This document shows positions 8,983 to 58,100 of a stretch of DNA of 64,000 nt, piece by piece. The DNA is taken from assembly GCA_002269645.1 (NCBI GenBank), contig NIVC01001096.1, positions 295,332 to 359,331 of the forward strand. The letters run 5' to 3'. The number at the start of each line of letters is the position of its first letter. Position 1 is the stretch's first letter. The notes beneath the pieces were generated by a model that saw nothing but the letters and a program-made list of their open reading frames with translations, made no database searches and was not told where the DNA came from. The stretch is from Macrostomum lignano (lineage: Eukaryota). The position numbers and the translations under genes were made by a program.

Positions 8983-9038
<56 letters not shown>

Positions 9039-12000
9039 GCAGAGACAGAACTCACGTCTTATTCTTTCTGTAGCAGTGGCAGGCCAGGGCCAGAGACAAG
9101 AAGCCGATGAACAGCACGACAACCATAACAATGCCAACCGGCTTGTTCACCAGCGGACAGTCCACAACCTGCGTCTTTTTCGTTGGCTCTCCGCCAGGCA
9201 GGTAGCAGCGCCTGAAGTGCGGGCATTGGGAAGTATTGAAACGCAGATAGGGTTAAAAATTAATAGGTAAGAGAGGTGAGAGGGAGAGGCAAGTGGGAGG
9301 TGTGTGATAAAGGTGAGGAGCTGATAAGGCATATGAGGAATCTCATTAATACAGAGCCACAGTGCTTATTGCAATCAATCAGACTCACTTTGGCGGGTAC
9401 ATGTGTACAGTCTGCTTGCCCATGACGCACTCTCCGTTCACCCTTTCGTATTCCTTAGTCTGGCACAGTTTGCAGGCCTCCTTGGCCTCCATTAGCAGGT
9501 GAAAATTGCAGCCGTCGCAGGTGCCGTCGGGACAATTTGGCGGCAGGCTGAGGCGCGGAGTGGCGGCCTTGGGATCGCAGCGCAGAGTTACCAAGGTGAC
9601 GCGGTGCTTGGAGCAGACCTGGATTGGATTGCAATTGTTTTTAGTTAATTATTATAAACTTCGGAAAAAGAACCAATTATCGATCGATGGTGAGTTCCCG
9701 GAAAAAATCAATAATCGATCGATGGGGAACTTCAGGAAAAGAATAAATTATCGATCGATGGTGAGTTCCCGGAAAAATCAATAATCGATCGATAAGAAAC
9801 TTCCGGAAAAATCAAGAAACGATCGATGGAAACTTCCAAAAGAATAAAATTATCGATCGATGAGGAATTTCCGGAAAAATCAATAATCGATCGATGAGGA
9901 ACTTAATAGAAAAACATCAAATAAATGCATGAAAAATAGGAGAAAATCAAAGAATCAAAAAGAAACCAGCAACAAGTTTGTGATCACCTCAGTAGTATAA
10001 TCCGACTCAAAGAAGATGTGAGTGTCCATTTTGTCCGGATCGCTTTTCCAGCCGGACGCCTTGAGCATTGCCTCAGCGCCCGGGCTCTGCTCAGAATTGG
10101 TGGCGTTCACTAGCCGATCGGCGAAGGAGTTCGGCAGGGCGGCCAGGGTCAGACTGGAGTTGCCGTGATTCGGGACAATGGTGACGCGGCAGACAAAGGA
10201 TTCAACAGATTTGTCCGCCAACTGAAAGGGGCGTAGGTTTGAACTTCTAGTTGACATTCTTGAAGATGCATGGATGTTAAGGTATATAGGAATGTGGATT
10301 TCTGTAGGTTAGAGATTTGGGACCTTGGGGTGACTCAGCACTTCTGCTCATTCCACCATTCTTTAAGATTAGGGATTGATGATTCTAGTTTAGGGATTTG
10401 GGATTCTTGTAGATTATGGATTTTGAATTCTTGTGCATTATGGATTTGGGGTTCTTGTAGATTATGGATTTGGGAATCTTGTAGATTATGGATTTGGGAT
10501 TCTTGTAGATTCTGGATTTGGGAATCTTGTAAATTATGGATTTGGGATTCTTGCAGATTAGGGATTTAGGATTCTTGTAGATTATGGATTTTGAATTCTT
10601 GTGCATTATGGATTTGGGATTTATGGATTTGGGATTTTTGCAGATTTGGGATTTGGGATTCTTGTAGATTATGGATTTTGGATTCTTGTGCATTATGGAC
10701 TTGGGAATCTTGTAAATTATGGAGTTCCCTAATTCTTGCAGATTAGGGATTTGGGATTCTTTTAGATTATGGATTTGGGATTCTTGTAAATTTGGAATTT
10801 GGGATTCTTGTAGATTAAGGATTAGGTAATCTTGAGATTTGGGATTTGGGAATCTTGAGATTTGGAATTTGGGATTCTTTTAGATTATGGATTTTGGATT
10901 CTTGTAGATTCTGGATTTTGGATTCTTGTAGATTATGGATTTTGAATTCTTGTGCATTATGGATTTGGGATTCTTGTAGATTATGGATTTGGGAATCTTG
11001 TAGATTATGGATTTGGGATTCTTGTAGATTCTGGATTTGGGAATCTTGTGCATTATGGATTTGGGATTCTTGTAGATTATGGATTTGGGAATCTTGTAGA
11101 TTATGGATTTTGGATTCTTGTAGATTTGGGATTTGGGATTCTTGTAGATTATGGATTTGGGATTTTTGCAGATTTGGGATTTGGGATTCTTGTAGATTAT
11201 GGATTTTGGATTCTTGTAAATTATGGATTTGGGATTCTTGTAGATTATGGATTTGGGATTCTTGTAGATTATGGATTTGGGATTCTTGTAGATTATGGAT
11301 TTTGAATTCTTGTGCATTATGGATTTGGGATTCTTGTAGATTATGGATTTGGGAATCTTGTAGATTATGGATTTTGGATTCTTGTAAATTATGGATTTGG
11401 GATTCTTGTAGATTATGGATTTGGGATTCTTGTAGATTATGGATTTGGGATTCTTGTAGATTATGGATTGTGAATTCTTGTGCATTATGGATTTGGGATT
11501 CTTGTAGATTATGGATTTGGGAATCTTGTAGATTATGGATTTTGGATTCTTGTAGATTTGGGATTTGGGATTCTTGTAGATTATGGATTTGGGATTTTTG
11601 CAGATTTGGGATTTGGGATTCTTGTAGATTATGGATTTTGGATTCTTGTGCATTATGGACTTGGGAATCTTGTAAATTATGGAGTTCCCTAATTCTTGCA
11701 GATTAGGGATTTGGGATTCTTTTAGATTAAGGATTTAGGATTCTTTTAGATTATGGATTTGGGATTCTTGTAAATTTGGAATTTGGGATTCTTGTAGATT
11801 AAGGATTAGGTAATCTTGAGATTTGGGATTTGGGAATCTTGAGATTTGGAATTTGGGATTCTTGTAGATTCTGGATTTGGGATTCTTGTAGATAATGGAT
11901 TTGGGAATCTTGTAAATTATGGATTTCGGATTCCTGCAGATTAGGGATTTGGGATTCTTGTAGATCAAGGATTTGGGATTCTTGTTGGAATTCTTGACCG

Positions 12001-18000: not shown

Positions 18001-21000
18001 GGGGCTTGATAGGTTTTATTGCAATAGCGAATTGTAAAAATCTGATTAATATGGGACTAAGGGATTTGTCACTGAAATCCCCGAATCCTTATTTAGATTT
18101 TTGTGTCACTGAAATCCCCGAATCCTCATTTAGATTTGTGTGTCACTGAAATCCCCAAATCCTCATTTAGATTTCTGTCACTGAAATCCCCGAATCCTCA
18201 TTTAGATTTGTGTGTCACTGAAATCCCCAAATCCTCATTTAGATTTGTGTCACTGAAATCCCCGAATCCTCATTTAGATTTGTGTGCCAGCCACTGAAAT
18301 CCCCAAATCCTCATTTAGATTTGTGTGCCAGCCACTGAAATCCCCGAATCCTCATTTAGATTTGTGTGCCAGCCACTGAAATCCCCAAATCCTCATTTAG
18401 ATTTGTGTGCCAGCCACTGAAATCCCCAAATCCTCATTTAGATTTGTGTGCCAGCCACTGAAATCCCCGAATCCTCATTTAGATTTGTGTGCCAGCCACT
18501 GAAATCCCCAAATCCTCATTTAGATATGTCACTGAAATCCCAAAATCCTCATTTAGATTTGTCACTGAAATCCCCAAATCCCCATTTAGATTTGTCACTG
18601 AAATCCCCAAATCCTCATTTAGATTTGTGTGCCACTGAAATCCCCAAATCCTCATTTAGATTTGTGTGCCACTGAAATCCCCAAATCCTCATTTAGATTT
18701 GTGTGCCACTGAAATCCCCAAATCCTCATTTAGATTTGTGTACCACTGAAATCCCCAAATCCTCATTTAGATTTGTCACTGAAATCCCCAAATCCCCATT
18801 TAGTTTTTTGTTTGAAATCCCATTTATAGAAGTTTATTAGGGGAAGGTTTGTTGTATCACAGAAATCCTTATTACAGGAGATAAACATCATTAAAATGAG
18901 CTGAAGAGAGACTGAGACAAAAGAGAGAAGACAGATTTTAACGGACAATAAAAAAGGGAAAATATCAAGGCACTAAAAACACAAGCATCCAATTTGCAAG
19001 ACACTCAAAACGCACGTCGAGTCGAATTAATCCCTGTTCGAGGATTAGCGGATTAAAACATCGCATCGAATTTCTTGCTCACGCAAAAAGCAGAGAGTAG
19101 AAGACCAGAGAGAGGCCTAGGCAGAAAGCTCAAGATTAGTAAATTGACGCCCGTAATGAAAAAATATTTTTCATTCGATCTAGTCGATTTAGTCCACACC
19201 AAAACTGCCAGGGTTTTTATAGGCCTAAGATAACTGAAGGTACCAACGTAGCGAGCCTGATTTATTTTACGGTCTGACCACGGCTGGTCCTGCACGAAAA
19301 AGTGCGTAGATTATCAGGATGCTATGATACTGAATAAAATACAATATACCCGTAAATATATACACTTTAAGCCAGGGAAGCATGCAGACGGGAGCAGGAG
19401 GGCATCGCCTCCCATCCCCCTCTAGGAGACAGGGGCGCCCAACAAGATAAGAGACAGGGCCACCCACCCAAGAGACAGGGCCGCCCACCCAAGAGACAGG
19501 GCCACCCACCCAAGAGACAGGGCCGCCCACCCAAGAGACAGGGCCGCCCACCCAAGAGACAGGGCCGCCCACCAAGAGACAGGGCCGCTCACTAGGAGAC
19601 AGAGGCGCCTACCAAGCGACAGGGCCGCCCACCCAAGAGACAGGGCCGCCCACCAAGAGACAGGGCAACCCACCCAAGACAGGGCAGCCCACCCAAGAGA
19701 CAGGGCCGCCCACCCAAGAGACAGGGCCGCCCACCCAGAGACAGGGCCGCCCACCCAGAGACAGGGCCGCCCACCCAAGAGACAGGGCCGCCCACCAAGA
19801 GACAGGGCCGCCCACCAAGGGACAGGGCCGCCCACCAAGAGACAGGGCCGCCCACCAAGAGACAGGGCCGCTCACCAAGAGACAGGGCCGCCCACCCAAG
19901 AGACAGGGCCGCCCACCAAGAGACAGGGCCGCCCACCAAGAGACAGGGCCGCCCACCCAAGAGACAGGGCCGCCCACCCAAGAGACAGGGCCGCCCACCC
20001 AAGAGACAGGGCCGCCCACCCAAGAGACAGGGCCGCCCACCCAAGAGACGAGGGCGCCCACCTAAGAGCAAATAAATGCGATATTAAGAGGCTCACCGTA
20101 TGCCGTTTGATTTCATTTCTGTCAGTCTCGTCAAGAAGCGGACTGCCGCTGTCCTCACTGCTGCTAACGCTCTCGCACAGTCCGTTCTGCACTTCGAATG
20201 CAAATAATTCTAATTCACTTCGGTATTGATAGAGGAATGTCACGGAACCGCTGCTGACCACATTTACTGTGTAGGTGAGGCTGAGCTGGCAGTTGTTGTC
20301 GGACTGGCCAGATAAATACGATCCCATCGTCTTCCACCGGGCTCTGCGAAATTTGGAATTCGCTGGGATGTAGATTTCAAGTGCTTGGATCTAGATTGCA
20401 AATGCTGGGATCTAGATTGCAATGCTGGGTTCTAGGTTGCAAATGCTGGGATCTAGATTGCAAATGCTGGGATCTAGATTGCAAATGCTGGGATCTAGAT
20501 TGCAAATGCTGGGATCTAGATTGCAAATGCTGGGATTTAGATTGCAAATGCTGGGATCTAGATTGCAAATGCTGGGATTTAGATTGCAAATGCTGGGATC
20601 TAGATTGCAATGCTGGGTTCTAGGTTGCAAATGCTGGGATCTAGATTGCAAATGCTGGGATTTAGATTGCAAATGCTGGGATCTAGATTGCAATGCTGGG
20701 TTCTAGGTTGCAAATGCTGGGATCTAGATTGCAAATGCTGGGATCTGGGTTGCAAATGCTGGGATCTAGGTTGCAAATGCTGAGATCTGGGTTGCAAATG
20801 CTGGGATCTAGATTGCAAATGCTGGGATCTAGTTTGCAAATGCTGGGATCTAGTTTGCAAATGCTGGGATTTGGATTGCAAAATTCTTAAATCTGAATTG
20901 CAGAAGAGGGGATCTATTTTGAAAACACTGGGATCTAGTTTGCAAACACTGGGATCTAGTTACAAATGCTGGGATCTAGTTTACAAATGCTGGGATCCAG

Positions 21001-22240: not shown

Positions 22241-25200
22241 TTATAGAAAACCCACAGTCCGTGGCACTGGCTCGTAGAAGGCGTCGGTCTTCTGCCGGGA
22301 TTGCAGAGGCCTCAGAACACGGTCGCTCGGACGGATGACGTGGTCTGCTGCCCTGGAGAGTCGGTCGGCGAGCCGCTTTATCTCCTCTTTCGTCTGGCGG
22401 TTGCGGTCGGCGATGGCCGCTCTTGTCGCGTCGATGGGTTGCGAGTTTTGGAGGCTCGGGATCACATCGTTGATTTGCCTGCCAAATAGCAGACTAGCCG
22501 GTGCGACGCCTGTGGCGCAGTGTGGAGTGCGCCTGTACGCTGCCAGGTATTCGTCCAAGGCCAGCGTCCAGTCCCGACCTTCGAGGACCGCCGCGCGAAT
22601 GGCTTTGTTCAGCCCCTGGTTGCACCGCTCCGTTGCGCCGTTGGCCTGAGGGTAGAGAGGCGTGATTCGATGGTGCCGGGCGCCTGATCCACCAGGAAGC
22701 TGCTGAACTCGGCCGATGCGAAGGGCGGGCCGTTATCCGTAGTTACCTTCGCCGGCTGCCTGAAGATGCTGAACCACCGGCGCAGCACCTTGATGACGGC
22801 GGAGGCGGTGGTGCTGGGCATGACCTCCACGAGCGGGAACCTGGAGAAGTGGTCCGTGCAGACGAGCAGCGACTTGCCGCTTACCGGTCCGAGGAAGTCC
22901 AGCCCCAGCTCGAGCCAGGGGCCCTCCGGTAGTTCGGTCGGCTTGAGCGGCGTGGTTTTCGGCGAGGTCTCGCGGGTGCAGGCCTGGCAGCTGATGCAGG
23001 CTGCCACGTGCGCTTCTACGGATGCTCGCATGCCGGGCCACCAGACCTTCGGTTGTAGGCGGTCCAGCGTTTTTCTGACGCCCTGGTGGGCCAGCTGCAG
23101 GCACCGGTATCGCAGAGCCGTCGGCATGTACAGTTGGCTGCGGCACAGCAGCAGGCCGTCCAGTTCGGACAACTCGTGGGCCACGCCGTGCAGTCCCTGT
23201 AGGCTCGGGTCGCTCTTGTCCCACTGGTTCCCGCGGATGGCGTGCAGAGCTGCTTGGACGGTGTAATCTTGGTCGGAGGCGGCCTTGATGATGGTCAGGC
23301 TGATGGACACCGGGGTGGCCGCCCGCACTGCCGTGGCCAAGTAGATCGCATCCGCCTGCTCGCCGACGTTGTTCGGCGGCATTGGCAGCGGCTGGCGGCT
23401 CAGGACGTCGGAAGGATTGCCGGCTCCGGGCTGGTAAACCACTTGGAAGACCAGGTCTTGCAGTCGCAGCGCCATGCGCTTAATGCGGGGCTACCAGCCG
23501 CAGGGATACCAGCGGCTTGTGGTCGGTGATCACCTTGAAGCTGCCGCCGCCGCTGAGGTAGTGATGAAACTTCAGGCCACCGTACTTCACCGCGAGCGCC
23601 TCCCGCTCCGTCTGGGAGTAGCGCTGCTCGGTCGGGCTCAGGCTGCGGCTCGCGTATGCCACCGGCCGCGTCGATCCGTCAGGTTGGACTTGGGCGAGGA
23701 TGGCGCCGACGCCCGTGGGGCTGGCGTCCACGATTAGCTGGGTCGGAAGCTTGCTGTTGAAGAATGCCAGCGCCTCGCTGCTGGCGATCGTTTGCTTGAT
23801 GTCCTTGAACGCGGCCTCCTGTTGTTCGCCCCCATGTCCACTCGGCGGCCTGCCGGGTCAGCTCTCGGAGCGGCCGGGCCATGTCGGACAGGTTGCTGAT
23901 GAAGCGCGCGAGGAAGGTGACGAGGCCGAGGAACGAGCAGACCTCGGTCGCGTTGGTCGGCCGCTTGAAACTGTTGATGGCCGCCACTTTCTCGGTGCTG
24001 GGGTGAATGCCGACTGCAGATAGCCGCATGGCGAGGAAATCGACCTCTCGCTGAGCGAATCAGCACTTTTTGGGGTTCAGCGTGATGTTGCTGGCCTTCA
24101 GCCGGGCCAGGCAGTCTCGCAGGCTCTGATTGTGCTCTTCAATGTTCTTTGCGTACACTAGGATGTCGTCGTGCACCCAGCGGACGCCGGGCAGGACGCT
24201 GAGGACGGAGGTCATCACCCGCTGGAGGATCTCGGAGGCGGATGTGTAGCCCATGCAGAGCCGGCGCAGCCGCAGGAGCCCGATGGGCGTGGAGAACGTC
24301 AGCAGATCCCTGGACTCCTCGGCGACTTCAATTTGGTGGAACGCTTTGGCGACATCCAGCTCCGAGAAATACGTCGATCCGGCCATTTCGTCAGTTACCT
24401 CTTCGAATGTGGGGATCGGCTGCTTCTCCGGGATGACGTACTTGTTCACCTCGCGGAGGTCCTCCTGGGTGATGCGCACCTCTCCCTGCTCGGCCTTCGG
24501 GACCGAGACCATCCTGGAGCACCAGGCTGTTGGCCCGTGCACTCGCTCGATGATTCCCAGTGCAAGCTGCTCTTCCAGCTCCTTGATGACGGCAGCCCTG
24601 AGGTGCACTGACACTCGGGATGGCGGTTGGCAGACTGGGGTGGCATCTGATCTCAGCTTGATGGTGATGGTGACGCCCTTCGCGCATCTGATGCCCTGAA
24701 AGCGGTTGCTGAAGTCCGCCAGGATGCTCTCAAGCTGCAGCTTCTTGGGCAGGTGCTGATCCTCGCATCTCGCTGGTTTGGCCAGGCTGGCCACCACCGC
24801 CGAGTTTGAGCAGGCCTCTGGGCCGACTCTCAGCATACCGAGCTTCGTGCTGGACGCTCTGCCGAGGATTGGGGTGCAGCTGCTCCGGATGACAATGAAG
24901 TTCGCCTGCAGCTCGCGGTGGTTCGCCCTGACGGTGAGCGTCGTTTGACCGGCTGCCTCCAGCGGCTTGCTGGCGCCGAGCGCGAAGACTCTGGTGCTGG
25001 ACGGCGCAAGTGGCATGCCGCGGCTGCAAATTCTGCGGAACGTCGCCATGTCCAGTACGTTGCAGCTTGCTCCGCTGTCGATCAGTGTGCAAACCTGCTG
25101 ACCGTTGATGCTGTTGGGGAATTTGGCGCTATCGTCCTTGCCGATGAGCGTGCAGAACACCTCGTTGACTGGCTGGTCCGCAGGCTGGTCTTGCTCGGGC

Positions 25201-26214
25201 TGTAGGGCGTTGATCTTCGAGCGGCTGAGGCAGGCCTTGGCCAGGTGGTTGAACTTGCCGCAGTTGGTGCACCGCTTGCCTAGCGCCCTGTTGCAGCTCC
25301 TGTGACCCGACTCGCCGCACCGAATGCACTTCGCGGATGGCTGCGGCTGGCGCGACGGTTTCAGCGGCGGGTGGCGCTGGCGGCGCACCTGCGCCACTTC
25401 CTCGGAGGCTGCCGTTGTCCTGGACATGATGGCCGCCTGCTTCTCTGCTGCCTCGTGCGTCCTGGCCAGTTGGAGGGTGTCCGCCAGGTTGATGTTGGGG
25501 AGGTTCAGCAGCCGCTTTCTCAGCGACTCGCTGCGGCAGCTGGCCACAATTTGGTCCCTGACGAGCGAATAACGTAGGCTCTCGAACTGGCAGGCTTCCG
25601 AGGCGCTCCAGAGTCTGCTGTGCCAGGCGTCTATTGACTCGCCTTCGTCCTGCACGCACTGGCGGAATTGGTAGAGGAGAAACACAATGTTGTCGCGACC
25701 TTGGAAATGCTTGGTGAACAGAGCGATCAGCTGGTCGACCGTGGGTTCGACTGTAGGTTCACCTTCTGTTGTGTCGGTCTCTGTTATTATGATCTTGCTA
25801 TACAGGTCGCTTACTTCTTTGCCTGCCGTGTATAGGAGGATCTGGCGTTTCTGTGTCTCGTTTGTGATGCCCGTGGCCGCCAGGTAGCGCGAAGGTTGGT
25901 TGACCACTAATGCCAGCGCTTACTTGTGGAGTGGGGGTCGTCTCTAATGCTAAAGTTACCTGGGGCCAGCAGTTGTAGGAAGGCCATGGTTCAGCCTTGC
26001 GACACCAATGTAATGACTCAGGAGTCAGGCAGTATTTGTGGCGTGCGAGAAAAAGTTCTTAACCCTCCAAGTAGGGTGGGACAATATTTATATATTTGGA
26101 AGCAATCTGATTGCAATGTGCACAAGAGCCGCATGCCTTACGTACATAAGTTGAGTAGCGACATGTACTTGCTAATACAATGTACAAGCTAGCACTAGCC
26201 AGAGTGGCATTACA
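22241..26214 (-). mobile_element. Decayed Ty3/gypsy LTR retrotransposon (Mag/K02A2.6-like), 3'-truncated
   Basis: Order is gag (ATG 25987; premature stop and frameshift; two CCHC-type knuckles), protease LIDSGA, RT (LDVAKAFHQI, WVHDD), RNaseH (DASPTGVGAIL, YSQTEREAL, TDHKPL), integrase (HQG..WWPGM..C..C, LDF, TDNGPPF). The pol region is split over 4-5 frames. No 3' LTR was found. Confidence 0.95.
26009..26214 (-). repeat. 5' LTR (206 bp) of the gypsy element, followed by a PBS-like TGGTGTCG at ~26000-26007
   Basis: On the minus strand it begins TGTAATG and ends CATTACA (7-bp inverted ends), contains TATATAAA, and is followed 1 nt later by TGG and then the gag ATG. Confidence 0.75.
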
Positions 26215-39551: not shown

Positions 39552-42500
39552 TTAAGCCTTCAGCGCTTGTTTCTTCTGTTGCAGCTTAGCTTTCTTATTC
39601 TTGTTCTTATTCTTCTTTTTGTTATTAGTAGTAGCTGGCTGTGACTGCTGCTTAGGGGCGGCAGGAGCGGCAGGCTGATTAGATGGTTTCTTTGGCAGAG
39701 ACGGCTGCTGCTCCGGCTTCTGTTTTACGCCAGCAACGTCGCCATTGGCATCGGCGGCCAATTTTCGCTGTTTCCTCTCGGCGGCCAGCTGATTCTTATA
39801 GCTGGCCGATCGGCCAAACGCTACGCGCAGCTTGCAGCCTCGCACAGCGGCACCCTGGGCGGATTTCAAAGCTTTCAAAGCGTCGGCAGGCTGTGCGTAT
39901 TCAGCGAACGCGTAGCCAGCCGTTGACTTGTCGCGCAGGGTTGGCACTTTAACACTAGTCGCGTTCGGGAACAGAGCGGCCAACTCCTCTTTAGTGGCGT
40001 CTTTGGCAACATTAGTAATAAATAGTTGGCGCGTATTCAAAGTGGCCACATCAACGCTGCCAGTTTGTGCCATTTTGGCTACCAATTCAGACCCGTTGAA
40101 CATTTTGCCATTGAGCATATTCACCCATTTGGCGGCCGTGGTCGAGTCTTTGTATTGAAGGAAAGCGTAGCTCCGATTTTCCGATTTATTCTTTGGATTG
40201 CAAGGAATTCGAGAGGATACAGTCTCTTTAGATAGCTCTTTTAGCATAGCCTGGGTGCAGCCCTTCGGAATCGGGGTGATGAACACAGTGCAGTTAAGCG
40301 ACTCAGTCATTAGACGCTTGATTTCTTCTACAACATCCGGCGGTCCCGGGTCCGACTCGGCGACGACAGAAGTGGCTGGTTGCTTTTTCTGCTTGTTGGC
40401 GGCTTGAGTAGAAGCTTCTTCGGCTGGACGCTTCTGGCCGCGCTGCTGTTCTTGCTGTTGTTGCTTTTGCTGCTGCTGCTGCTTGGCAGAAGCGTCAGTC
40501 TTTGCTAGCTTAGCAGGTGGCGCAGCCTCTTCTTCTTCATCGTCGTCGTCCTCGTCTTCATCATCGTCATCATCATCTTCTTCGCTGTCGCTCTCAGCTG
40601 GACGCTTCATGCGCGACAAAGCTAGCGGCTCCAGCTTCTGTTGACCTTTCTTTTGGACCGGGAGGGCAGCTGGCTCTTCTTCGTCGTCGTCTTCATCATC
40701 TTCCTCATCGTCCGAGGAGCCTGCGTCGGCCAGCAGCTTGGCAATGGATTCTTCGTTGACATCCTCGTCTAGTTCGTCGTCATCTAGATCCTCTTCGTCT
40801 TCGTCTTCTTCTTCCTCCTCGTCGTCGTCGTCTTCATCATCATCGTCGTCCAAATCGTCGTCTTCGTCGCTGTCCTCTTCCAGCTTTCGCTTGGCCTGCG
40901 GGCGAGAAAAAATATTATCACTTTTTTTTAAAATGGGATGAATACAACCAGAAATGCATCGAAAAATTGTAAGAGCAGAACTCACCGGCAGTTTGACAAG
41001 CTGTCCAGCAGGTGATTTATTACTGCCAGCTGTTCCTGCGGCTGCAGCGGTGGCGGGCGACTTAGCAGCGGTAGCAACGGCGGTAGCTGGCGACTTAGCT
41101 GAAGCGGCAATAGCCGGTTTCTTTGAAGGCGGCGGAGCTTCTTCGTCATCGTCATCGTCGTCTTCTTCATCATCCTCATCGTCTTCGTCGGAGCCGGCAG
41201 CGGCTAGCATCTTCTCGATCTTGTCCATGTCCATCTCCTCTTCATCGTCATCATCGTCGTCTTCCTCTTCGTCATCATCCAAATCTTCGTCGTCATCATC
41301 ATCGTCTTCCTGTTCGACCTTCTTCGCAGCCGGTTTCGCCGCGGCGGCTGGCTGGAATAAAATAGGGATTAAACTACTGAGATTGTGAGATGGGGAATAA
41401 GCTTCTGACATTGTGAGATGAGGAATAAGCTACTGACATTGTGAGATGGGGAATAAGCTACTGAGATTGTGAGATGGGGAATAAGCTACTGAGATTGTGA
41501 GATGGGGAATAAGCTACTGACACTGTGAGATGGGGAATAAGCTTCTGACACTGTGAGATGGGGAATAAGCTACTGACATTGTGAGATGGGGAATAAGCTT
41601 CTGACACTGTGAGATGGGGAATAAGCTACTGAGATTGTGAGATGGGGAATAAGCTTCTGACACTGTGAGATGGGGAATAAGCTACTGACATTGTGAGATG
41701 GGGAATAAGCTTCTGACACTGTGAGATGGGGAATAAGCTACTGACATTGTGAGATGGGGAATAAGCTTCTGACACTGTGAGATGGGGAATAAGCTACTGA
41801 CATTGTGAGATGGGAAATAAGCTTCTGACACTGTGAGATGGGGAATAAGCTTCTGACACTGTGAGATGGGGAATAAGCTACTGACACTGTGAGATGGGGA
41901 ATAAGCTACTGACATTGTGAGATGGGGAATAAGCTACTGACACTGTGAGATGGGGAATAAGCTACTGAGATTGTGAGATGGGGAATAAGCTTCTGACATT
42001 GTGAGATGGGGAATAAGCTACTGAGATTGTGAGATGGGGAATAAGCTACTGAGATTGTGAGATGGGGAATAAGCTACTGACATTGTGAGATGGGAAATAA
42101 GCTTCTGACACTGTGAGATGGGGAATAAGCTTCTGACACTGTGAGATGGGGAATAAGCTACTGACACTGTGAGATGGGGAATAAGCTACTGACATTGTGA
42201 GATGGGGAATAAGCTACTGACACTGTGAGATGGGGAATAAGCTACTGAGATTGTGAGATGGGGAATAAGCTTCTGACATTGTGAGATGGGGAATAAGCTA
42301 CTGAGATTGTGAGATGGGGAATAAGCTACTGAGATTGTGAGATGGGGAATAAGCTACTGACATTGTGAGATGGGGAATAAGCTTCTGACACTGTGAGATG
42401 GGGAATAAGCTTCTGACACTGTGAGATGGGGAATAAGCTACTGACACTGTGAGATGGGGAATAAGCTACTGACATTGTGAGATGGGGAATAAGCTACTGA

Positions 42501-48500: not shown

Positions 48501-48980
48501 TTCATAGAAAATTCTGGCACAAAAGGGGTTAGACATGTGTTGCACTGGCATATTCCAGTGCAGAAACAAGCAAGGGAGAAAAATCTAGCATAGTATAGGC
48601 CTAAAATTTGCTAGAATTTGGTGCAAGAAGAAACTTTCAACAAGACAATATTTTCTACTGATAGAAAATTAGCATCTATAATTTCTTGTTATTAGCACTT
48701 TTTGTTTGCTAGTATATTGATGGCTTTTTATTTAATTTATGTGAATATTGCATTTTTTATGAAACAAATTCCAATATAAGTTTTTTCAGTATTTTTCAAA
48801 TAGAAAATTATTGGGCATAGTTCTAGTTTACTTCGTTATATTATTCTGCCTTTTGTTAAATTATTTTACCCCATTTTTCTGCTTCGCAATTATAAGCCAC
48901 TTCATGATGGTGAAGTCATCCCGACTGGCTTCTACCATCTTGCGAATTCTGAAGTTTCTTTTAGTATAGTTTAAAAGCTC

Positions 48981-51867
48981 CCCGCCAAACTCTGCAGCCA
49001 GATTTTGATCTGAAATTTATACTCCTTCACCCGGATTGTGCCGGAAAAGAGCTTGTTTTCGGACCACAACCGGACGAAACCGGAGCAGAACAAAACCGGA
49101 CAAAGACCGGTCCAATAAATTCCAAGAATCGGACAAATCCGGAACAATGAGCGCCGGTTATTCGTCCGGAATATTGTCCGCTTGTTTGTTATGTGAGCAT
49201 CCGTTTTGAGCGTGACGAAAAACTGGTGCAGGAGGGGTAATGCGTCATTTCTGTACCGGATTTTCGCCCGGTATTTTGACTGGGCGCCGAGCCGTCGTTT
49301 CACCGGTACGCAACGGACAATATTCCGGTTCGGAAAGCTGGTTTAATAATGGCTATAATTGCTATCCCGCTAAAAATGGGCTTCTTCTTCGGCTGCTTCT
49401 GGCTGGAAGTACCGATGCTTCCAGAAAATGAAGCAGCTGAGTGTAGGAAACACTGGCTGTCTTTAACTCCGCAAAGCCGGTCCCAAGCCTGGTTGCAAAA
49501 GGAGGAGGGTTGAAGAAGCCTTGACTCTCTTGTAAATTTACAAGAGAGTCGAGGCTTACGTTAACGTAAGTCGATCTGCTGAGATAACTGCGGCTAGCAG
49601 CGAGGGGTAATACAACCTCGCAGATGTTGGGGAGTTTGTTTGTCAAATAAATTGATGCGTTACTGAAGATGTAGTGGAAACATCTTCTGTTTTGGTTCAA
49701 TTTGTTTATCGCACTTGTTCTTTCTTTCCTGTATTATTTATGCCATACGTCGTACATCCGTTATCCAAAATCCAGCAACCCTAAATTTTTCTTTCTTTCT
49801 TTCTTGGCTAAGAGTCGCGTCCTATTATATTTTCAGGGCCATTAAATCTGCAGGGCCATTATATCCTACATAGGTCCTACAAGAAATAGCTAAGAAGTAT
49901 TTTAAATTAGGTCAAAGTCTAAGTCTAAGTTTGTCACAGAAGTCAAACCGCTAGATAAGTTTATAAACTTATAGCTCATTTACTCGTAGATTCTGTTCCT
50001 TCGACATGTACGCGTGCTAATGAATCAGTAATACCCCCGCCCTCAGCTGCCTAGACGTATGGAGGATGATGAAAAAAGGCTGCACAGGCGGTTGTACATG
50101 CGGGCATACCGGTTTCGAAGAAAGTTAAATGCAGCAACTCTAGCCCGATCGCGATCCCCCGTGGAGAAACGCGGCGCTGGCACGTCAGCTGACGCTGACG
50201 CTGCAAGTGCAGCTTCTAACGGCGCTGTTAGCAGTGACGATGACAGTGATGCTGTTACTGTTGATCCTGCTCCTGGTGACAGTGACGGTGGCACATCTGG
50301 TCAACAAGCATGCTGTGATCAGGTTGACCCATCGGCTGACAGTGACAATACCGAACCTGCGGATGACTGTAACAGTGAGTCTGCATCTGCAGACAACGAG
50401 ACTAATTGTGAGAGCGTTGATGTCGCATCCTCATCTGACTCTGGTAATAGCTTCTCAGATGTCGGTGACAGTAAGTAATGTCACATACATTATAATTGCA
50501 TATTGCGATGCAGATGCATATACACCTCCCTCTAAAGTCATTTCATTCGTTTCATTTTTGATCAAAGGCGACTTTGACAGTGACGAAGACGCACCGCTGC
50601 CGGTACCTGATGCACAACTGCATCAGCCGTTCCATCCAGCGCTTCCGGGAACGCTGGGCCAGGCTGCGTCAGACATTATGCTGTTTGTCATAGAGACTGC
50701 GTTCGGAACATTTGTCGCTGTTGCAGTGTCTCTTGCGGGCACTGTTCTCTGAGACGGAGTTTTCAGGCGCAAATTTCTCGGGCCGAAAGCTGGGGGACCA
50801 GCTGACTGCTGCCGCTAACCCAGCCAAACTGCTTATCGCTAAGCAGTGGCTGCAGAACGTTGGCGTCATCGCCACTAAGCGCCAACTACAACGCGCTTTC
50901 TCGCGTTGCCGTGAGACGGCACGCGTTCGCCAGGGTCTGCCGAAACTGAAGTGCCGCCGTATCACCGGCCCGAGGCCCGGATCGAGCGGCCCGAGGCCAA
51001 GCGCTACCAAGAGGCCGAAGAAGGCCTCCTCGACGACAGACTCCCATGCCATCGTTGTTGTCATGGAGGAGCCTGATGAGAACCATCCGGTTCTCATTTA
51101 CCCTTCGCCTGCGACTGCGGCTACGGATACGTTGGCGGCTTCAGTGACGACGGCTAACCTCGTCACGAGCATGGACGATTTGCAGTCGGCCGGTAGCCTC
51201 GTTGACTTGCTGAAGCTTGTGGTTGACGGTTGGTTCGGCCAATTGAACATCCTTTATCACCTTTATCACCTTTATGACTCATTTGTGAGTGCCAGAAGGG
51301 AAGCAACACATTTGTAAGGGACCATGTGTGATTTGCGATGTTCGGTGCTTTCGATGTTTCGGAAGTAAAAATAAATTGCCATGGAAATGGAAAGGTTGAC
51401 AAATGCCTGGATTGAAAAAAAGTACTTCCTTTTAAACTCTTCAATTTTCTTTTCATTTTCTATTCGCGTGGAAGACTGCCTCCTGCTCCGGAGAGAACGG
51501 TTCAAGATTAAACCGGGCCGGTCCGGCTTTCGGTCCGGTCTCGATCCCATTTGGATCGGTCAATGCCACGGTCCAGCAACCGGCGCAACATCTGGCTCTC
51601 TTTGACCGGATCAGGCACCGGAACAAAACTGGCGCAACATCTGGCTCTCTTTGACCGGATCAGGCACCGGAACAAACTTCGGAATAATCACCGGACATAA
51701 AACAGGGCAAAGGCGATAAAATCTGAACGCCTGGTCCTGAAACGTAACTTTTTGTCCGGCTCTGTTCCGGTTTCTTTACACTGTGGATATGGGCCGATTC
51801 CAGACAATAAACCGGATCAAGATACTGGTGCTAAAAGCAAAAAATCGGACGAATTAAGTTTGGCAGG
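48981..51867. mobile_element. Putative non-autonomous CMC/EnSpm-like DNA transposon with CCGG-rich subterminal regions
   Basis: Termini CCCGCCAAACT / AGTTTGGCAGG (10/11 inverted match), possible 2-bp TC target duplication; dense (A/T)CCGG(A/T) motifs at 49040-49340 and 51500-51830 with partial inverted similarity. Confidence 0.5.
50059..51317 (+). CDS. BEN-domain-like protein with basic N-terminus and acidic linker; one frameshift near 50711 or an extra intron
   Basis: Exon 50059-50470, GTAAGT..AAG intron, exon from 50568. Segment LLQCLLRALFSETEFSGANFSGRK..NPAKLLIAKQWL..LQRAFSRCRETAR fits the BEN-domain pattern by eye. Confidence 0.6.
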
Positions 51868-53869
51868 TCGGTGCAGCTGGGCGACAGGCCATAATGGCTG
51901 AAAGTGTTGTGGTAAGAGTACAGATGCAAGAAAATACATGAAATTAATATAACGAAGTAAAGTAGAATTATGAAATAATATAACAAAGTAAACTAGAACT
52001 ATGCCAATTATTGATTTTTGCTTTTTAAAAAAGTTGCAGTAGCCTACACAATGCAAACAAATTTTTATATAGGAATAGTTTTGGTGCATGGCACAAGCAA
52101 ACTTTTTTGATAAGAATTGTTTTAGTATATAATATATGAATATGGTACAATCAAACTTTTTTGATAGGATTCATTCTAGCACAGGCATACTATGATCTTG
52201 ACTATGGCCACTGAATAGTCATTTTGATTTTGTCTATTATAGTAATATAAAAGGGGCACATGATATATAACTCTCTAAGCTACTTGACAACTGTACTAGG
52301 CCCTATGCACAAACTATAATAGCTCAAGAATTAACCAATTGCTTGAATTATTAAAAGTTGACAAGCTTATGCAGTACAGATACCAACATACATGCGCAAC
52401 AGTCAGCCGAGTCAGCCGATCCAGCTGACTGATTTGGCAGCCAACCAAGGAAGTCGCAAAAATTCCATCCCGAAAAAATAACCAAGAAGTAGTACTAAGT
52501 AGCTGACAAGGCATGTTGGCTTAATAAGGCAGTCATAGTTACTCCTGCCGTTTACCCAAAGTTGCGTTAATTTTGCTTCAGGGTTTTTTTACATGTAAGT
52601 CGCATTTTTGGCCAAAAACTATGTCACATTTTTGTTAAAACTAAATCGCATGGCCGACCGAATTTTGGAGGTTGCGCATGAATGAATACCAACTAAACTG
52701 TACAGTGAGTGTACCAATTTATATAATTCTAGGCCTAGGCTACACTATGTCTGTTTTTAAGTAGATTAGAGTCTAGACCTATATCATTGACAAAAAAGTT
52801 AAATTCAAAGTGAAGTCTTGAATAAATGTTAGTCCTAGGCCTAAAGCTTAGATGAACTATGCTATGGATATAGCATATTATGGATATATGGATATGGACT
52901 ATGGTTATGATAACAGTGCCACTGCGGCACTGCCACTATTATTGGATAAGTTGTTTTATGACAAAGTCTAATTGTCTAACCAACTAGATACAAATTGCAT
53001 AGTCATAAGATAGTAAGAAAAAAATTAATTTAACTAAAACAACGGGAAAATCTTAACTTCTGGCAGCGCACTAACTTGCTTGCAACCGTTAGAAGCAGCA
53101 ACATGTGAATGCCTGCTGATCATGCGCCATGTGCGAGCCGTAAGTTGCGAAGAGTGAATTTTAAAACTGTTCAAAGTCACTATTGTTTGTGCATTTAAAA
53201 TCGAAGCAGTTAAACACCCATGCCTAGTAGATACCAAAGGTAGCCATAATTCTTGCAGTGCAAGCATAAAATAATATTTTTTGTTTCTATTGCTAAATAA
53301 TAAGCATCAGTAGACTCAAATAAAGCACATACTTAACGTTTTTGCAGCATCAGTAGGTGGTTTTCACAATGGGCAACGAAATGCAGCGGCAAAAAATCCC
53401 ATGTGCTAAACTGAGTATCAGCAGTCACAATTCTTAATTGTTCGCATGCTTCGAGTCTTTTTTGTTTTCCTACATGTACACTATAATATCAATAACTAGA
53501 ATTTAATCTAATCGTTGCCTAAGGCTAGCTTGCACACACGTCTTTCATAACTCACCGTTTGCTTTCGTTGATAGTTAAAAGGGTATGACTTTCCCCTTAA
53601 GTCTTCGGTCGTTAGTTGATGCTTTTTAATAGCGGTCAGTAGAGGTCAGTTTTATATATCCTCATGGACTTTTTTTGTTACATATGTAGATGACAATTAA
53701 CTATAAAAATGAAAACTCTGTCTATGGCCAAGATCCATTGCAAATCTTCTTACCTAAAAGGAGATGGAACAGAAGATTAGGAAGAGCAACAGGGGAGAGT
53801 CCAGAGACAAGAAAAAAGAAAATAAAGAAAATAAAAGTCCAGGGAGAGGCGAGAAAAGATATACATGTA

Positions 53870-54360
53870 AGAGAAGAGAAGAGGAGAGGAGAGGAGAGGA
53901 GAGGAGAGGAGAGGAGAGGAGAGGAGAGGAGAGGAGAGGAGAGGAGAAGAGAAGAGAGGAGAATAGAGGAGAAGAGAGGAGAGAGTGTAAAGAGGAGATA
54001 GAGAAGAGAAGAGAGGAGATAAGAGGGATGAGACAGGAGAAGAGAGAGAAGACAAGAGAGAGTAGAGAGAAGAGAGGAGCGATAAGAGATAAGAGAGAGG
54101 GGGGAAAGAAGAGAGAATAAAGAGGAGAAAGAAGAGAGGAGAGATGAGATATGAGAGAGAGGGGGGAGAGAAGAGAGAATAAAGAGGAGAAAGAAGAGAT
54201 GAGAGAAGAGGGATGAATGAAGAGAGGAGAGAGAAGACAAGAGAGAGAAAAGAGAGGAGAAAGCTAGGAGAGAAAAAATATTTGATAGATAAGATCAGAA
54301 AAGAAAGGAGAGAGGAAAGAGGGGAAGAGAAGGGAAGGGAAGGGAAGAGAGGGAAAGAAG
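53870..54360. repeat. (GAGGA)n microsatellite grading into a GA-rich low-complexity tract
   Basis: Directly visible. Confidence 0.93.
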
Positions 54361-55146
54361 TTTTAAAGGGCACGAGGGAAGTAGAGGCAGAGGCCAGAAT
54401 TTGCCAAGGCAAGGTTTAGACAGACGTTATTCTGCGCGGCACCCCAGCCGCGCTTTTGTTTTGTTTTTTAGTTTAACTTCAGGTTTGGGATTGCGATTGG
54501 AAACTAACATGAGTGCTGTATTACATGTATAGGGATGAAGCAGCGCTTATTAATTTTCTACCAATCTCTTGCAAATCGGTGACATGCAGTCCTAAAGATG
54601 GGCTTTCACCAATTGCTGCATTTGGTTGAAACTGTAACTTTGTTCTTGAGCTCAAGGCCAAGGTTTACCTAAACCTGTCGCAAAGACTTTCGACATGACT
54701 GGCTATATCAGAGAGAGCCAATTTGTGTCCATGAATGATGTAGGAATGACTTTTAAATTTAAAAATGCATGCAACAATATAGTTCCGAGGATTCGAATTT
54801 AGCGGGTTTAAAATATCGGGTTTCAACAGTTTGAATTCGATCTTATATGTATTTAATTATTAGTGATGTTAGTCATTGATTGTTCTCGAGTCAAAGCTAG
54901 TTCATGGGCGTAATATCCATTCTTTCCTTCAAAAATGAATGAAAAAGCAAGCATTTTAAATCGGCAAAAGAAAGGAATTTACAAATCCATCGGATCTATT
55001 TTATTAACAAAATAATTGGATTCATACACTTGAACGAAAACCTGACTCCAGGGTTTTGAAATCTCACCCAAAAGCGTAAAAAAAGTATTTTTTTCCCGAA
55101 AAAATGAGCAAAGGAGATCGAGAGGAGTTAAAGTTAAAAAACTTTC

Positions 55147-58100
55147 TTATTCGTCACATTCAGCATAGGCTGCAGACTCTTGTGTTTTCTCTGAAGCAGG
55201 AGCCGGGTTATTAGTCTTTGTTTCAGAGGCAGTCCCCTGTAAACTTTTAATTTTTGTTCTTATCTTCTCTGCTGGCGAATGCTCGAAAGATTTCCGGCCG
55301 TATACGAACGAATCCAGTTGCGTCGGGAAGGTATCAATACGGAAGTTCCTCAGATATAAAACGTAGTCATTTAAGTCTTCGTTGATGCGCCACTGTGTGT
55401 ACCAGTGAGGTGGCTTAGTTCGCTGGCGCTTTGGTCTGAAGCCGATGAGGCGTTCAGCATCCGTTGAGTACATCCAAACGAAGTTCTTCTGAGCGCAAAT
55501 TAGACCTATATGTAAAAAATGTAGAAAGCCAGTCGTTAGATTCAAGGTAGAAAACTCCGCTATTCGAGCCAGTGGCTGTGCGTGCACCCTGGCGCACTCT
55601 AAGCGACAAGCGACATAGGCGCACTCTATCTTGTCGCACAACCGGCAAGAGGCATTACTGCCATTCCACCGACGCGCCTGAGCAGGCACACAAGCACGCG
55701 GATACGTACGCAGTCATACGCACAGGCACACACTCACACAGGAGTGTACAGCGGCCCTACTTTATTTATAGTTCGGCATGTACACTTCACTGTGCCTTGG
55801 GGAGTTGGTCCTCAAGCTGGTTGTTAATTTCACGAGCAGAGCCAAGCCGAGATTCCAATTTAGCCTTCAATTAATGTGCATGCACTTGGAATCGAGCCCG
55901 GGCCGCTGGCACATTAGAGCGCCGCGTTAGACCACGAGGCTACGGCCCCTCCCAATCTATTTGCTCTAATTAAATCCCAATCCAAGAGCTTTCATTCACC
56001 AGGCTGATTGACTGGCACGTCGGGCAGATCTAGCCACAGCCCGGCATCTCTCGTGGCCTTGTCCCGCTGATTCAATTCGAACACAAGAGCCAGCGATTCG
56101 GTCAGCACGGCTGGCAGGACGCGATTCTGCGTGTCAGACCTTGCGTCCGGCTCATCGCATCCCGGATAAGTCATCACGTCATGCAGCCAGATCTCTTTAT
56201 TGGCGTCGAGCATCAGGTCCAGTCCAAACAGCTGCCAGCTGCCTGGCTTGTCGCCCACAATGCTGTCAATCTGGCTGGCCAAGTTGTTAACAATTCGATG
56301 CAAACGACGCAAAAATCGATGCTCCGAATTTGTCGAATCCGAGGTCGACGACGAAGGCTGATTTGACGATGACGAAGTCGTTGGCCAGAGTGCGGAATCG
56401 AGCTCGCGACTATTAGTGATAGACGGCAGGCCGAGAGATTCGCGCGCATCGTCGTATGGTCGGCAATAATCGGCCGAGCTGTTCGAGGCAGTCTTTTCCC
56501 GGCCATGTCTCGAATAGTCGGGGTCCCAGGTGAACGGCCACGTGAAGTGACAGCGCAGATCATTGCTTTTCTCTTCGTACTCGCGTTGAGCGATGCGAAT
56601 GTAGCCAGGGTGAAGGAAGGCAACGACCCGTCGGTCAGTGAGGACGGACACGAGTAGGAACATTCTCAAATCGAAACGTCGGCCTTCTAACAACTGAGGA
56701 TTTGTTAGGTGTCTGCAAGTGCAAGCGAAGTAGAATGACATATATAGCTGCAATCTTGATTCGAATAGTTTTACGCAGTAAAGATCATAGGACACAAGAC
56801 ACCAAGACAACAAAAACCAAGACAATTACACAGCCGCTAAAGAGACTAAGACACTAGATACTACGTGTAGGACACTAGGACACTTAAGGCACAAGAACAC
56901 AACACTTAATAATACACTAGGACCAGGAACCGTAAGATGTTACTAAAACCAAAGTTGCTATGAGATTGCAAACTAAAGACAGAGAAGCTATACAAAAGGA
57001 CACTTAGGACAACTAGGACATTTAAGACCACTAGGACACTTAGGTCCACCAGGACACTTAGGAAAACTAGGACACTTAGGACCACTCGGACATTTAGGAC
57101 AACTAGGACACTTACGACCACTAGGGCATATAAGACAACTGTCAATAGGATATTTGGGACCACTAGGACACTTAGGACAACTATCAATACGACATTTAGG
57201 TCAACTAGGACACTTACAACCACTAGGGACACTTATGACCACTATAAATAGGATACTCGGAACTACTAGGGCACTTAGGACAACTATCAATAGGACACTT
57301 GGGACCACTAGGACACATAGGACACCAAGACATTAGGATACTATTTCCATGTAGGTAGTTGAAGACACTAAGGACACTAGGCCTATAAGACACAAGACAC
57401 CAAAGCACAAAGACATTAGGTCACTAATGACACAGGGACAATTGAACACAAAGACGCATAATAGGACAATTGAGCAATAGGACACGCAGCCAGTTATCCA
57501 ATAACCTTTGCAGCACAAAGAACTGTCCTCGCAGCCGCCTATGCAGGTCGTAGCGCACAAAAGTCTCCAGCTCCGCGGCCGAATCGATCAGCTGAACTCC
57601 GTTGCCGCCTTTAAGGGAGGCGGCTCGAATCAACCAGCGCTGCTTGTCGCCATAGGCACCCTCTGAAAAGTGAACGGATTGAACTCAATTGTTCTACCTT
57701 AGAGCTCAATTGTCACTAGCTATCTTAGCTCTAGGTTTACTTACTGAGCATATTATCGCAAACATATTCAAATTTCTTCTTAGTAGCCAGTACAATCGTG
57801 TCCGGGATGAACAAATTCTCCTGGAAGCAGGTGCACATCCGTTTGCCACGCTGCGGACAATCTGGTTCACTGCACACCTGACCAAAGTCGTGCTTCATGT
57901 AGATGTGGTGGCACATCTGAAATAGAATCGATATCTAGAGGTGTTAACGAGCATTAAAGAATTTCTTATTTAAGGAATTACGAGCTAGGTTCATTCAATG
58001 AATTTTGAGTTTTTTTAGGGGCAATTAGAACCTACATGTAAAGGCTTGTTGACACTGCCAAAAAATGAAATCAATTTTTTGGTATTCTCCTCATCTGGTT

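What the first reader, a model, noticed from the sequence alone, without database searches (positions are those of the whole stretch)
48981..51867. BEN-domain gene packaged in a CCGG-rich putative transposon
Seen: a GC-rich, spliced ORF (basic N-terminus, acidic linker, BEN-like domain at ~50712-50945) sits between two ~300-bp regions dense in ACCGG/TCCGG motifs, with short inverted ends and a 46-bp direct duplication (51582 and 51631). Known: BEN domains are DNA-binding chromatin regulators also found in viruses and transposons, and some BEN proteins recognise CG-containing motifs. Inference: a small transposase-less element encoding a protein that may bind its own subterminal CCGG arrays. 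Removing one T at 50710-50713, or an intron at 50603-50726, restores a single frame.
Basis: partly seen in the sequence, partly recalled or inferred. Interest (0 to 1): 0.7.

Follow-up and report, generated by a model that had tools for sequence, protein, structure and literature searches.

The report
Transposase-less DNA transposon carrying BEN-like gene
The 2.9-kb GC-rich island is a decayed, transposase-less copy of an apparently undescribed animal cut-and-paste transposon family, whose full-length relatives encode a large transposase plus a BEN-fold DNA-binding-type protein and carry arrays of an AACCGGA motif at both ends.

Summary
These are the spliced GC-rich ORF, two CCGG-dense subterminal regions (13 and 14 CCGG against about 2.5 expected), short inverted ends, a 49-nt tandem duplication and a frame shift near 50710.

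The transposon reading holds up. A Macrostomum lignano locus (L001) and a 10-kb marine metagenome contig (L002) have the same layout. Both have CCCGC... inverted termini (22 nt perfect; 33 nt at 97%), AACCGGA-rich arrays at both ends, and a homologous ORF just upstream of the 3' array.

L002 also encodes an 863-aa protein with a D..D..C(2)C..H(3)H-E motif order, as in CACTA/Mirage/Chapaev transposases. The window has no trace of that protein.

The conserved 80-aa domain gets no Pfam BEN hit. However, an AlphaFold model (pLDDT 82) has BEN domains as its 12 best PDB matches, and the only profile hits in PDB are the NAC1 BEN domain.

This copy looks dead: the frame is broken and the 5' terminus is degenerate. 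Binding of the protein to the arrays, by analogy with En/Spm TnpA, is inferred and untested. The superfamily and the target-site duplication remain unresolved.

The parts
48981..48991 (+). 5' terminal inverted repeat core, CCCGCCAAACT. A degenerate extension runs to about 49010.
   Evidence: Inverted match to 51857-51867. It aligns with the CCCGC termini of L001, L002 and L003.
48981..49340 (.). 5' subterminal array: 13 CCGG, mostly AACCGGA in forward orientation.
   Evidence: Enrichment is about 5-fold over dinucleotide shuffles, 0 of 300 reaching the observed count.
49516..49557 (.). Internal 21+21-nt palindrome in the non-coding leader. Function unknown.
   Evidence: 95% complementary, no spacer.
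50059..50470 (+). Exon 1: basic N-terminus (RRLYMRAYRFRR) followed by an acidic Asp/Ser tract.
   Evidence: The N-terminal motif resembles the start of the L002 transposase (score 45; 9 of 2000 shuffles reach it).
50471..50567 (+). 97-nt intron, GTAAGT...AG, phase 1.
   Evidence: Read directly from the sequence. No RNA evidence.
50568..50752 (+). Exon 2 as read in frame 1. It ends at TGA 50750-50752, before the BEN-like domain can be translated.
50694..51317 (+). Frame-2 ORF. BEN-like domain at 50715-50945, then a basic and Ser/Thr/Ala-rich tail. Stop at 51315-51317.
   Evidence: Homologues. AlphaFold model. BEN-only top Foldseek hits. NAC1 BEN profile hits.
51370..51375 (+). AATAAA, a candidate polyadenylation signal.
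   Evidence: Read from the sequence. Inference only.
51480..51867 (.). 3' subterminal array: 14 CCGG in mixed orientation. It includes the 49-nt tandem duplication at 51578-51675.
51857..51867 (-). 3' terminal inverted repeat core (AGTTTGGCAGG). The adjoining ATCGGACGAAT matches the family consensus AAWTCGTCCGG.

Best explanation
Window 48981-51867 is a non-autonomous, internally deleted copy of a TIR-type cut-and-paste DNA transposon family.

Shown:
- The family has CCCGC... inverted termini and 300-650-bp subterminal arrays of an AACCGGA(N2)AA motif at both ends.
- It carries a gene for a BEN-fold protein just inside the 3' array.
- A full-length relative additionally encodes an 863-aa protein whose motif order (D, D, C(2)C, H(3)H, E) matches CACTA/Mirage/Chapaev-type DDE transposases.
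- The window copy lacks that gene.

Inferred:
- The window ORF is a deletion fusion. It joins the 5' end of the transposase gene (basic RRxYMRxYRxR start plus acidic tract) to the 3' BEN-like exon.
- The frame break at about 50694-50713 lies at or near the deletion junction.
- By analogy with En/Spm, the transposase would act on the termini, while the BEN-like protein would bind the repeated subterminal motif. That binding would assemble or regulate the transposition complex.
- Copies like this one could be moved only in trans.

This particular copy is probably inactive, because its frame is broken and its 5' terminus has diverged beyond 11 nt.
For: Same architecture in independent loci:
- L001 (M. 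lignano): element 9273-11385 with a perfect 22-nt TIR. It sits inside a (CTGT)n microsatellite and has TCCGG arrays on both sides of the homologous ORF.
- L002 (marine metagenome): element 97-10043 with a 33-nt TIR at 97% and arrays at both ends. It encodes an 863-aa ORF and a BEN-like gene.
- L003 and L005: a 3' array, and in L003 a terminus, lie downstream of the homologous ORF.

The termini align across all loci, with consensus CCCGCY-N5-AAWTCGTCCGGTTTTT. The arrays are enriched 5-10-fold in all three elements.

Transposase link:
- M. lignano protein model P0004 joins a fragment 43% identical to the L002 protein (E 1e-25) to a BEN-like domain.
- Motif positions in P0012 are D286, D372, C391-x2-C394, H553-x3-H557, E558. 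This is the pattern described for EnSpm/Mirage/Chapaev/Transib in PMC12730594.
- The window has no transposase remnant.

BEN fold.

En/Spm precedent: TNPA binds the subterminal repeats, TNPD is the transposase, and the DNA-binding proteins of different CACTA elements are non-homologous (PMC2613891).
Against: - No Pfam family matches either the BEN-like domain or the 863-aa protein.
- The termini are CCC...GGG rather than the CAC...GTG typical of CMC elements.
- The target-site duplication is unresolved. A 2-bp duplication fits the window (TC/TC) and L001 (CT/CT) but not L002 (AT/CC).
- Only one copy is present in the 64-kb window, and copy number in the source genome could not be measured.
- The N-terminal similarity to the transposase is short (9 of 2000 shuffles reach it). 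The rest of exon 2 shows no significant similarity.
- DNA binding by the protein is untested. The transposase itself could be what recognises the arrays.
- All relatives were found by searching with the BEN-like domain. The apparent preferential retention of that domain in deletion derivatives may therefore be ascertainment bias.
Confidence: 0.7

Rival explanations
1. Same transposon, different role. The BEN-like protein would be a repressor or regulator rather than a cofactor. Deletion derivatives that keep only the DNA-binding module would occupy the subterminal sites and damp transposition, as KP-type P elements do.
For: Three differently deleted copies keep the BEN-like domain but lose the catalytic core: the window, L001 and P0004. 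In En/Spm, TNPA is both a positive and a negative regulator (PMC2613891). The KP analogy is from my own knowledge.
Against: Ascertainment bias, since all copies were found through the BEN-like domain. The window copy cannot translate the domain from its ATG without a frame correction. There is no expression data.
Confidence: 0.2
2. The subterminal arrays are bound by the transposase itself, as in hAT, P or Mutator elements. The BEN-like protein would then have an unrelated job, such as acting on host chromatin or in silencing evasion, or would be a passenger gene captured early in the family's history.
For: Many superfamilies use transposase-bound subterminal repeats (titles and abstracts listed, e.g. 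Herves, Kat1, Muta1). No direct evidence links the BEN-like protein to the motif.
Against: The BEN-like gene keeps the same position and orientation next to the 3' array in elements as far apart as a flatworm genome and marine metagenome contigs. That argues for an ancestral, element-specific function. The solved BEN domains that match the model are all sequence-specific DNA binders crystallised on DNA.
Confidence: 0.15
3. Not a mobile element. It would be an ordinary host gene whose promoter and terminator regions happen to carry clusters of CCGGA(A) sites, for example ETS-like factor sites.
For: There is a single copy in the window. The inverted ends in the window are only 11 nt with one mismatch.
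Against: Relatives have long perfect or near-perfect TIRs that start with the same CCCGC. One has sharp boundaries inside a microsatellite. A full-length relative carries a transposase-like ORF.
Confidence: 0.03

Closest known systems
En/Spm (CACTA) two-protein transposon system of maize, and other plant CACTA elements (Tam1, Tgmt*)
   Same: - Short TIRs plus several hundred bp of reiterated subterminal motifs in both orientations.
- The autonomous element encodes a large DDE transposase upstream and a separate DNA-binding-type protein at the 3' side.
- Non-autonomous copies are internal deletions.
- The accessory DNA-binding proteins are not homologous between CACTA families (PMC2613891).
- The motif order D..D..C(2)C..H(3)H..E is present in the L002 protein.
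   Different: - Termini are CCC...GGG, not CACTA.
- A 3-bp TSD is not seen.
- No Pfam Tnp2/Transposase_21 hit.
- The accessory protein has a BEN fold, unlike TNPA or TNP1.
- The host is an animal.
Animal CMC elements (Chapaev, Mirage, ENS1_Cis, CMC-NA MITEs)
   Same: They are animal hosts' elements. A 2-bp TSD is reported for some (PMC6004678), which is compatible with the window and L001 flanks. The C(2)C and H(3-4)H motifs are shared (PMC12730594).
   Different: Those elements share invariant 5'-CAC...GTG-3' ends, whereas this family starts with CCCGC. No alignment of the L002 protein to a bona fide CMC transposase could be made here.
BEN-domain DNA-binding factors (Drosophila Bsg25A/Insensitive, human BANP, BEND6, NACC1)
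   Same: These are the best structural matches to the model: TM 0.47-0.62, rmsd 2.0-3.2 A over 74-82 columns. Several relatives share the architecture of BEN-solo proteins, with an N-terminal coiled-coil-like region and a C-terminal domain (the comparison to BEN-solo proteins is from my own knowledge).
   Different: There is no Pfam PF10523 match and sequence identity is only 13-24%. The protein is encoded inside a transposon rather than by a host regulatory gene.
KP and other internally deleted P elements encoding only the DNA-binding module
   Same: A transposase-less deletion derivative that still encodes a putative DNA-binding domain able to recognise the element's own sites (my own knowledge of KP).
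   Different: In KP the module is the N-terminus of the transposase itself (THAP). Here it is a separate accessory gene, and in this copy it is out of frame.

Membership tests
BEN domain (Pfam PF10523) | Significant match to the Pfam BEN profile | tested here: not met
   No BEN hit at E <= 1 for the window protein or at E <= 10 for five homologues.
BEN domain (Pfam PF10523) | BEN fold: a compact, mostly helical domain superposable on solved BEN domains | tested here: met
   AlphaFold2 with a 7-sequence alignment gave pLDDT 82.2 and pTM 0.70. The 12 best Foldseek PDB hits are all BEN domains (Bsg25A, BANP, BEND6, NACC1), with probability 0.72-1.00 and TMq 0.47-0.62. E-values are only 0.1-1.6.
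BEN domain (Pfam PF10523) | Sequence-profile relationship to known BEN proteins | tested here: inconclusive
   The profile of A1 searched against PDB returns only two hits. Both are the NAC1 BEN domain and both align in register, but E is 0.17-0.2.
BEN domain (Pfam PF10523) | Sequence-specific DNA binding | not testable with these tools
   Needs EMSA, DAP-seq or PBM.
TIR (cut-and-paste) DNA transposon, non-autonomous copy | Terminal inverted repeats shared with an autonomous relative | tested here: met
   Window ends are 11 nt with one mismatch. L001 has 22 nt perfect and L002 has 33 nt at 97%. All begin with CCCGC and align.
TIR (cut-and-paste) DNA transposon, non-autonomous copy | Autonomous relative encodes a transposase; this copy does not | tested here: met
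   An 863-aa ORF lies inside the L002 TIRs. A homologous fragment sits next to the BEN-like domain in M. lignano P0004. tblastn finds no match in the window. The catalytic nature of the 863-aa protein rests on motifs only.
TIR (cut-and-paste) DNA transposon, non-autonomous copy | Target-site duplication of fixed length | tested here: inconclusive
   Flanks are TC/TC (window), CT/CT (L001, within a repeat) and AT/CC (L002).
TIR (cut-and-paste) DNA transposon, non-autonomous copy | Multiple copies or empty sites in one genome | not testable with these tools
   No eukaryotic genome collection was available. There is one copy in the window, and at least two related loci in M. lignano (L001, P0004).
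CMC (CACTA/Mirage/Chapaev) superfamily | [quoted passage not shown] | tested here: inconclusive
   The motifs occur in the right order in P0012: D286, D372, CDKC at 391, HYRGH at 553, E558. The definition is taken from PMC12730594. No alignment to a known CMC transposase was possible, there is no Pfam hit, and the AlphaFold model was unusable (pLDDT 34).
CMC (CACTA/Mirage/Chapaev) superfamily | 5'-CAC...GTG-3' (CA..TG) termini | tested here: not met
   Termini are CCCGC...GCGGG in all loci.
CMC (CACTA/Mirage/Chapaev) superfamily | 2-5-bp TSD | tested here: inconclusive
   A 2-bp TSD is compatible with two of three insertions.

The most novel reading that the evidence does not exclude
A previously undescribed lineage of animal DNA transposons, possibly a divergent CMC branch with CCCGC termini, uses a BEN-fold protein as its sequence-specific subterminal-repeat-binding factor. 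That protein would be the functional counterpart of En/Spm TnpA. If so, BEN would join THAP, BED and Myb/SANT among the DNA-binding domains that move between transposons and host regulators. BEN-only deletion derivatives such as this one could then be raw material for host BEN-solo factors, or could act as KP-like repressors.
Probability: 0.35. Interest if true: 0.65.

Novelty: new variant of a known kind. Interest (0 to 1): 0.5.

Why it matters
If the BEN-like protein does bind the AACCGGA arrays, this would be a transposon that uses a BEN-fold protein as its end-binding accessory factor. I found no report of that in the literature searches I ran.

It would give a concrete, testable protein-motif pair for a very divergent BEN domain. 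It would also suggest a transposon reservoir for BEN-domain regulators.

On the practical side, neither protein matches any Pfam model, and no paper retrieved in my searches describes this family. Its copies may therefore go unclassified in flatworm and marine-invertebrate genome annotation.

For this particular locus the consequence is modest. It is a dead copy in an AT-rich intergenic region.

Tried and rejected
- **Pfam on the window protein and five homologues:** no BEN or other meaningful hit.
- **Word-indexed protein searches:** the joined ORF and the domain alignment found nothing. The 863-aa protein found only itself.
- **Exact look-up of two window ORFs in public assemblies:** not on record.
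- **phmmer of the domain region and of the 863-aa protein against PDB:** nothing relevant.
- **Pfam on the 863-aa and 242-aa ORFs at E up to 10:** nothing.
- **AlphaFold of the 863-aa protein from a single sequence:** pLDDT 34, unusable, so no fold search was run on it.
- **Foldseek against viral models:** an uninformative mix. Two BEN-domain viral proteins appeared at ranks 18 and 23.
- **Metagenome and viral-contig scans for more copies:** none found.
- **Array-pattern scan of metagenomes:** mostly GC-rich bacterial contigs, plus a few eukaryote-like arrays without either protein.
- **Best phmmer hit P0001 (E 4e-24, 11 stretches):** rejected as a repeat and low-complexity artefact against the Ala/Thr/Ser tail.
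it does restore the frame, but it would remove about four residues (SLLQ) that align with the conserved first helix of homologues, and its donor (GTACCT) is weak. I rate it less likely than a 1-nt indel or a deletion junction, but it is not excluded.
- **The outer 90-nt inverted repeat as the true ends:** rejected, because the relatives' termini align to 48981 and 51867.
Full report
**Context**

The window is animal nuclear DNA. It carries a LITAF-like gene, ELAPOR1-like cysteine-rich exons, an acidic RRM protein, a TTL-family gene and an LTR retrotransposon. No tRNA or Rfam matches were found.

The only named relatives of the ORF are from the flatworm Macrostomum lignano. A 20-kb M. lignano locus shares a few repeats with the window at 70-85% identity. 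I infer a Macrostomum-like flatworm genome, but this is not proven.

The island at 48981-51867 is 51% GC in a 32-37% GC neighbourhood.

The ORF reads as follows:
- It starts at 50059 with a basic N-terminus and an acidic Asp/Ser tract.
- Exon 1 ends at 50470, followed by a 97-nt GTAAGT...AG intron (50471-50567).
- Exon 2 runs in frame 1 only to a TGA at 50750-50752.
- The conserved domain is in frame 2, open from 50694 to the stop at 51315-51317.
- The frame break is therefore real in this sequence.

CCGG occurs 13 and 14 times in the two subterminal regions, against 2.5 +/- 1.4 in dinucleotide shuffles (0 of 300 reach the observed count). The 2.1-kb interior is not enriched. The oriented motif is A(A/C)CCGGAnnAA.

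The ends are CCCGCCAAACT and AGTTTGGCAGG. The direct duplication is a 49-nt tandem pair at 98% identity.

**It is a transposon**

An exhaustive phmmer search of 1.84 billion representative proteins gave six genuine homologues of the frame-2 ORF. All share an 80-residue domain: LLRALLRALFxDEEFxxSNFSGRK...ANPAKL...ELQRAYTRCRETA.

*L001, M. lignano (PAA73791.1).* The gene lies in a 2.1-kb element at L001 9273-11385.
- The TIR is perfect over 22 nt: CCCGCCTGGCTTTTTCATCCGG.
- TCCGG-rich arrays lie on both sides.
- The boundaries are sharp, inside a (CTGT)n microsatellite.

*L002, a 10.2-kb Tara Oceans contig.* The homologue lies in a 9.9-kb element at L002 97-10043.
- The TIRs are 33 nt at 97% identity and start with CCCGCTG.
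- The 5' array is about 650 bp and is built from 153-nt units. The 3' array is about 440 bp and is built from 111-nt units.
- There is an 863-aa ORF upstream.
- The BEN-like gene there has an upstream exon. The 242-aa ORF splices from GTAAGT at 8185 to AG at 8566, in phase. This is my reading of the sequence.

*L003 and L005.* Two further short contigs show the 3' array. L003 also shows the terminus ...GACGAATTTTGCAGCCGGG downstream of the homologous ORF.

All termini align, with consensus CCCGCY-N5-AAWTCGTCCGGTTTTT. The window's 3' end fits this well. Its 5' end fits only for the first 11 nt and looks decayed.

**The transposase**

The 863-aa protein (P0012) has no Pfam match, no PDB match and no usable AlphaFold model.

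It does contain D286 (SDGF), D372 (FDAPA), C(2)C at 391, H(3)H at 553 and E558, in that order. That is the signature given for EnSpm/Mirage/Chapaev/Transib transposases in PMC12730594.

From memory, the stretch DGF...PVYL...G.W.G...FL.P...L..L...G...FDAPA...GC.KC also resembles Tnp2-type proteins. That is a lead, not a test.

M. lignano protein model A0A1I8FVG9 (P0004) contains a fragment 43% identical to P0012 residues 163-289 (E 1e-25). The fragment stops right after the first D and is followed about 130 residues later by a BEN-like domain. This is a second, differently deleted copy, and it links the two genes in a flatworm genome.

The window has no transposase remnant.

**Origin of the window ORF**

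The start of the window ORF (RRLYMRAYRFRR, then an acidic tract) resembles the start of the L002 transposase (RRRYMRLYRLRG, then an acidic tract). The local score is 45, reached by 9 of 2000 shuffles. It does not resemble the N-terminal exon of the L002 BEN-like gene.

I therefore infer a deletion that fused the 5' end of the transposase gene to the last BEN-like exon, with the frame break at or near the junction. A simple 1-nt indel, or an assembly error in the T run, would look the same.

**Is the domain BEN?**

Pfam says no.

A profile of the seven sequences finds only the NAC1 BEN domain in PDB. The alignment is in register but E is 0.17-0.2.

An AlphaFold2 model built with that alignment has pLDDT 82 and pTM 0.70. 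Its 12 best Foldseek matches in PDB are all BEN domains: Bsg25A, BANP, BEND6 and NACC1. Probability is 0.72-1.00, TM 0.47-0.62, rmsd 2.0-3.2 A, and E 0.1-1.6.

The model's first sequence used a one-base frame correction for residues 1-18. The matched core is the frame-2 part.

I conclude that this is a divergent BEN-fold domain, and I do not file it under PF10523.

**Mechanism**

Shown:
- The element's anatomy.
- The conserved linkage of termini, arrays and BEN-like gene.
- The presence of a transposase-like gene in the long copy and its absence here.

Inferred, by analogy with En/Spm: there, TNPD is the transposase, TNPA binds the subterminal repeats, and the DNA-binding proteins differ between CACTA families (PMC2613891). 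By that analogy the BEN-like protein would bind the AACCGGA arrays.

Two rivals remain. The protein could be a KP-like repressor. Alternatively, the transposase itself could bind the arrays while the BEN-like protein does something else.

The TSD is unresolved. A 2-bp duplication fits the window and L001 but not L002. Some animal CMC elements do make 2-bp TSDs, but they have CAC...GTG ends (PMC6004678). This family does not.

**Verdict**

The locus is a dead, non-autonomous member of a transposon family that matches no Pfam model. None of the papers retrieved in my searches links a BEN domain to a DNA transposon's end-binding function.

Interest is moderate. The copy itself is ordinary junk, but the family offers a testable pair of a BEN-fold protein and a repeated DNA motif.

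No step had to be referred.

Noticed in passing
window 48792-48880 and 51929-52032: An AT-rich inverted repeat of about 90 nt (83% identity) brackets the element, 100 bp and 61 bp outside its ends. The right arm carries a 31-nt tandem duplication. The element may have landed inside a MITE- or foldback-like repeat. No other copy of that repeat is in the window.
   Followed up: partly
window 49516-49557 and 49645-49707: A near-perfect 21+21-nt palindrome and a second 28-nt hairpin lie in the non-coding leader between the 5' array and the ATG. Their function is unknown.
   Followed up: no
window 22609-25907 (- strand): LTR-retrotransposon pol genes: aspartyl protease and reverse transcriptase at 24060-25907, and integrase (zinc-binding plus rve core) at 22609-23475.
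   Followed up: partly
window 39-974, 6048-7268, 8316-9137, 10846-11706, 12061-13596, 14145-15596, 19422-20071, 53722-54412: Long tandem or low-complexity repeats produce spurious ORFs of 130-500 aa in several frames on both strands. This fits a very repeat-rich genome.
   Followed up: no
window 3646-4050, 17328-17984, 39552-41411, 55992-56825: Host genes or exons: LITAF-like zinc ribbon, ELAPOR1-like TNFR-type cysteine-rich repeats, an acidic protein with two RRMs (nucleolin-like), and a tubulin-tyrosine-ligase-family fragment.
   Followed up: partly
L024 1-950; L063 3070-3306; L010 100-300: Other metagenome contigs carry dense arrays of the palindromic form TTCGTCCGGACGAA or of CGTCGTCCGGAAA, without either protein on the contig. 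They may be ends of related transposon families.
   Followed up: partly
L002 7509-8237 and 8567-9342: In the full-length relative, the 242-aa ORF appears to be the upstream exon of the BEN-like gene (GTAAGT at 8185, AG at 8566, in phase). The intact accessory protein would then be about 480 aa, with an N-terminal half of unknown function and no Pfam match.
   Followed up: partly
L001 18943-20498: A gene with Pfam DUF1258 lies 7.5 kb downstream of the M. lignano element. Whether it is transposon-related was not examined.
   Followed up: no
window 51060-51290 (ORF residues about 120-199): The Ala/Thr/Ser-rich tail of the ORF draws a strong but spurious multi-stretch phmmer hit (E 4e-24) to a 925-aa repeat protein, P0001.
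   Followed up: yes
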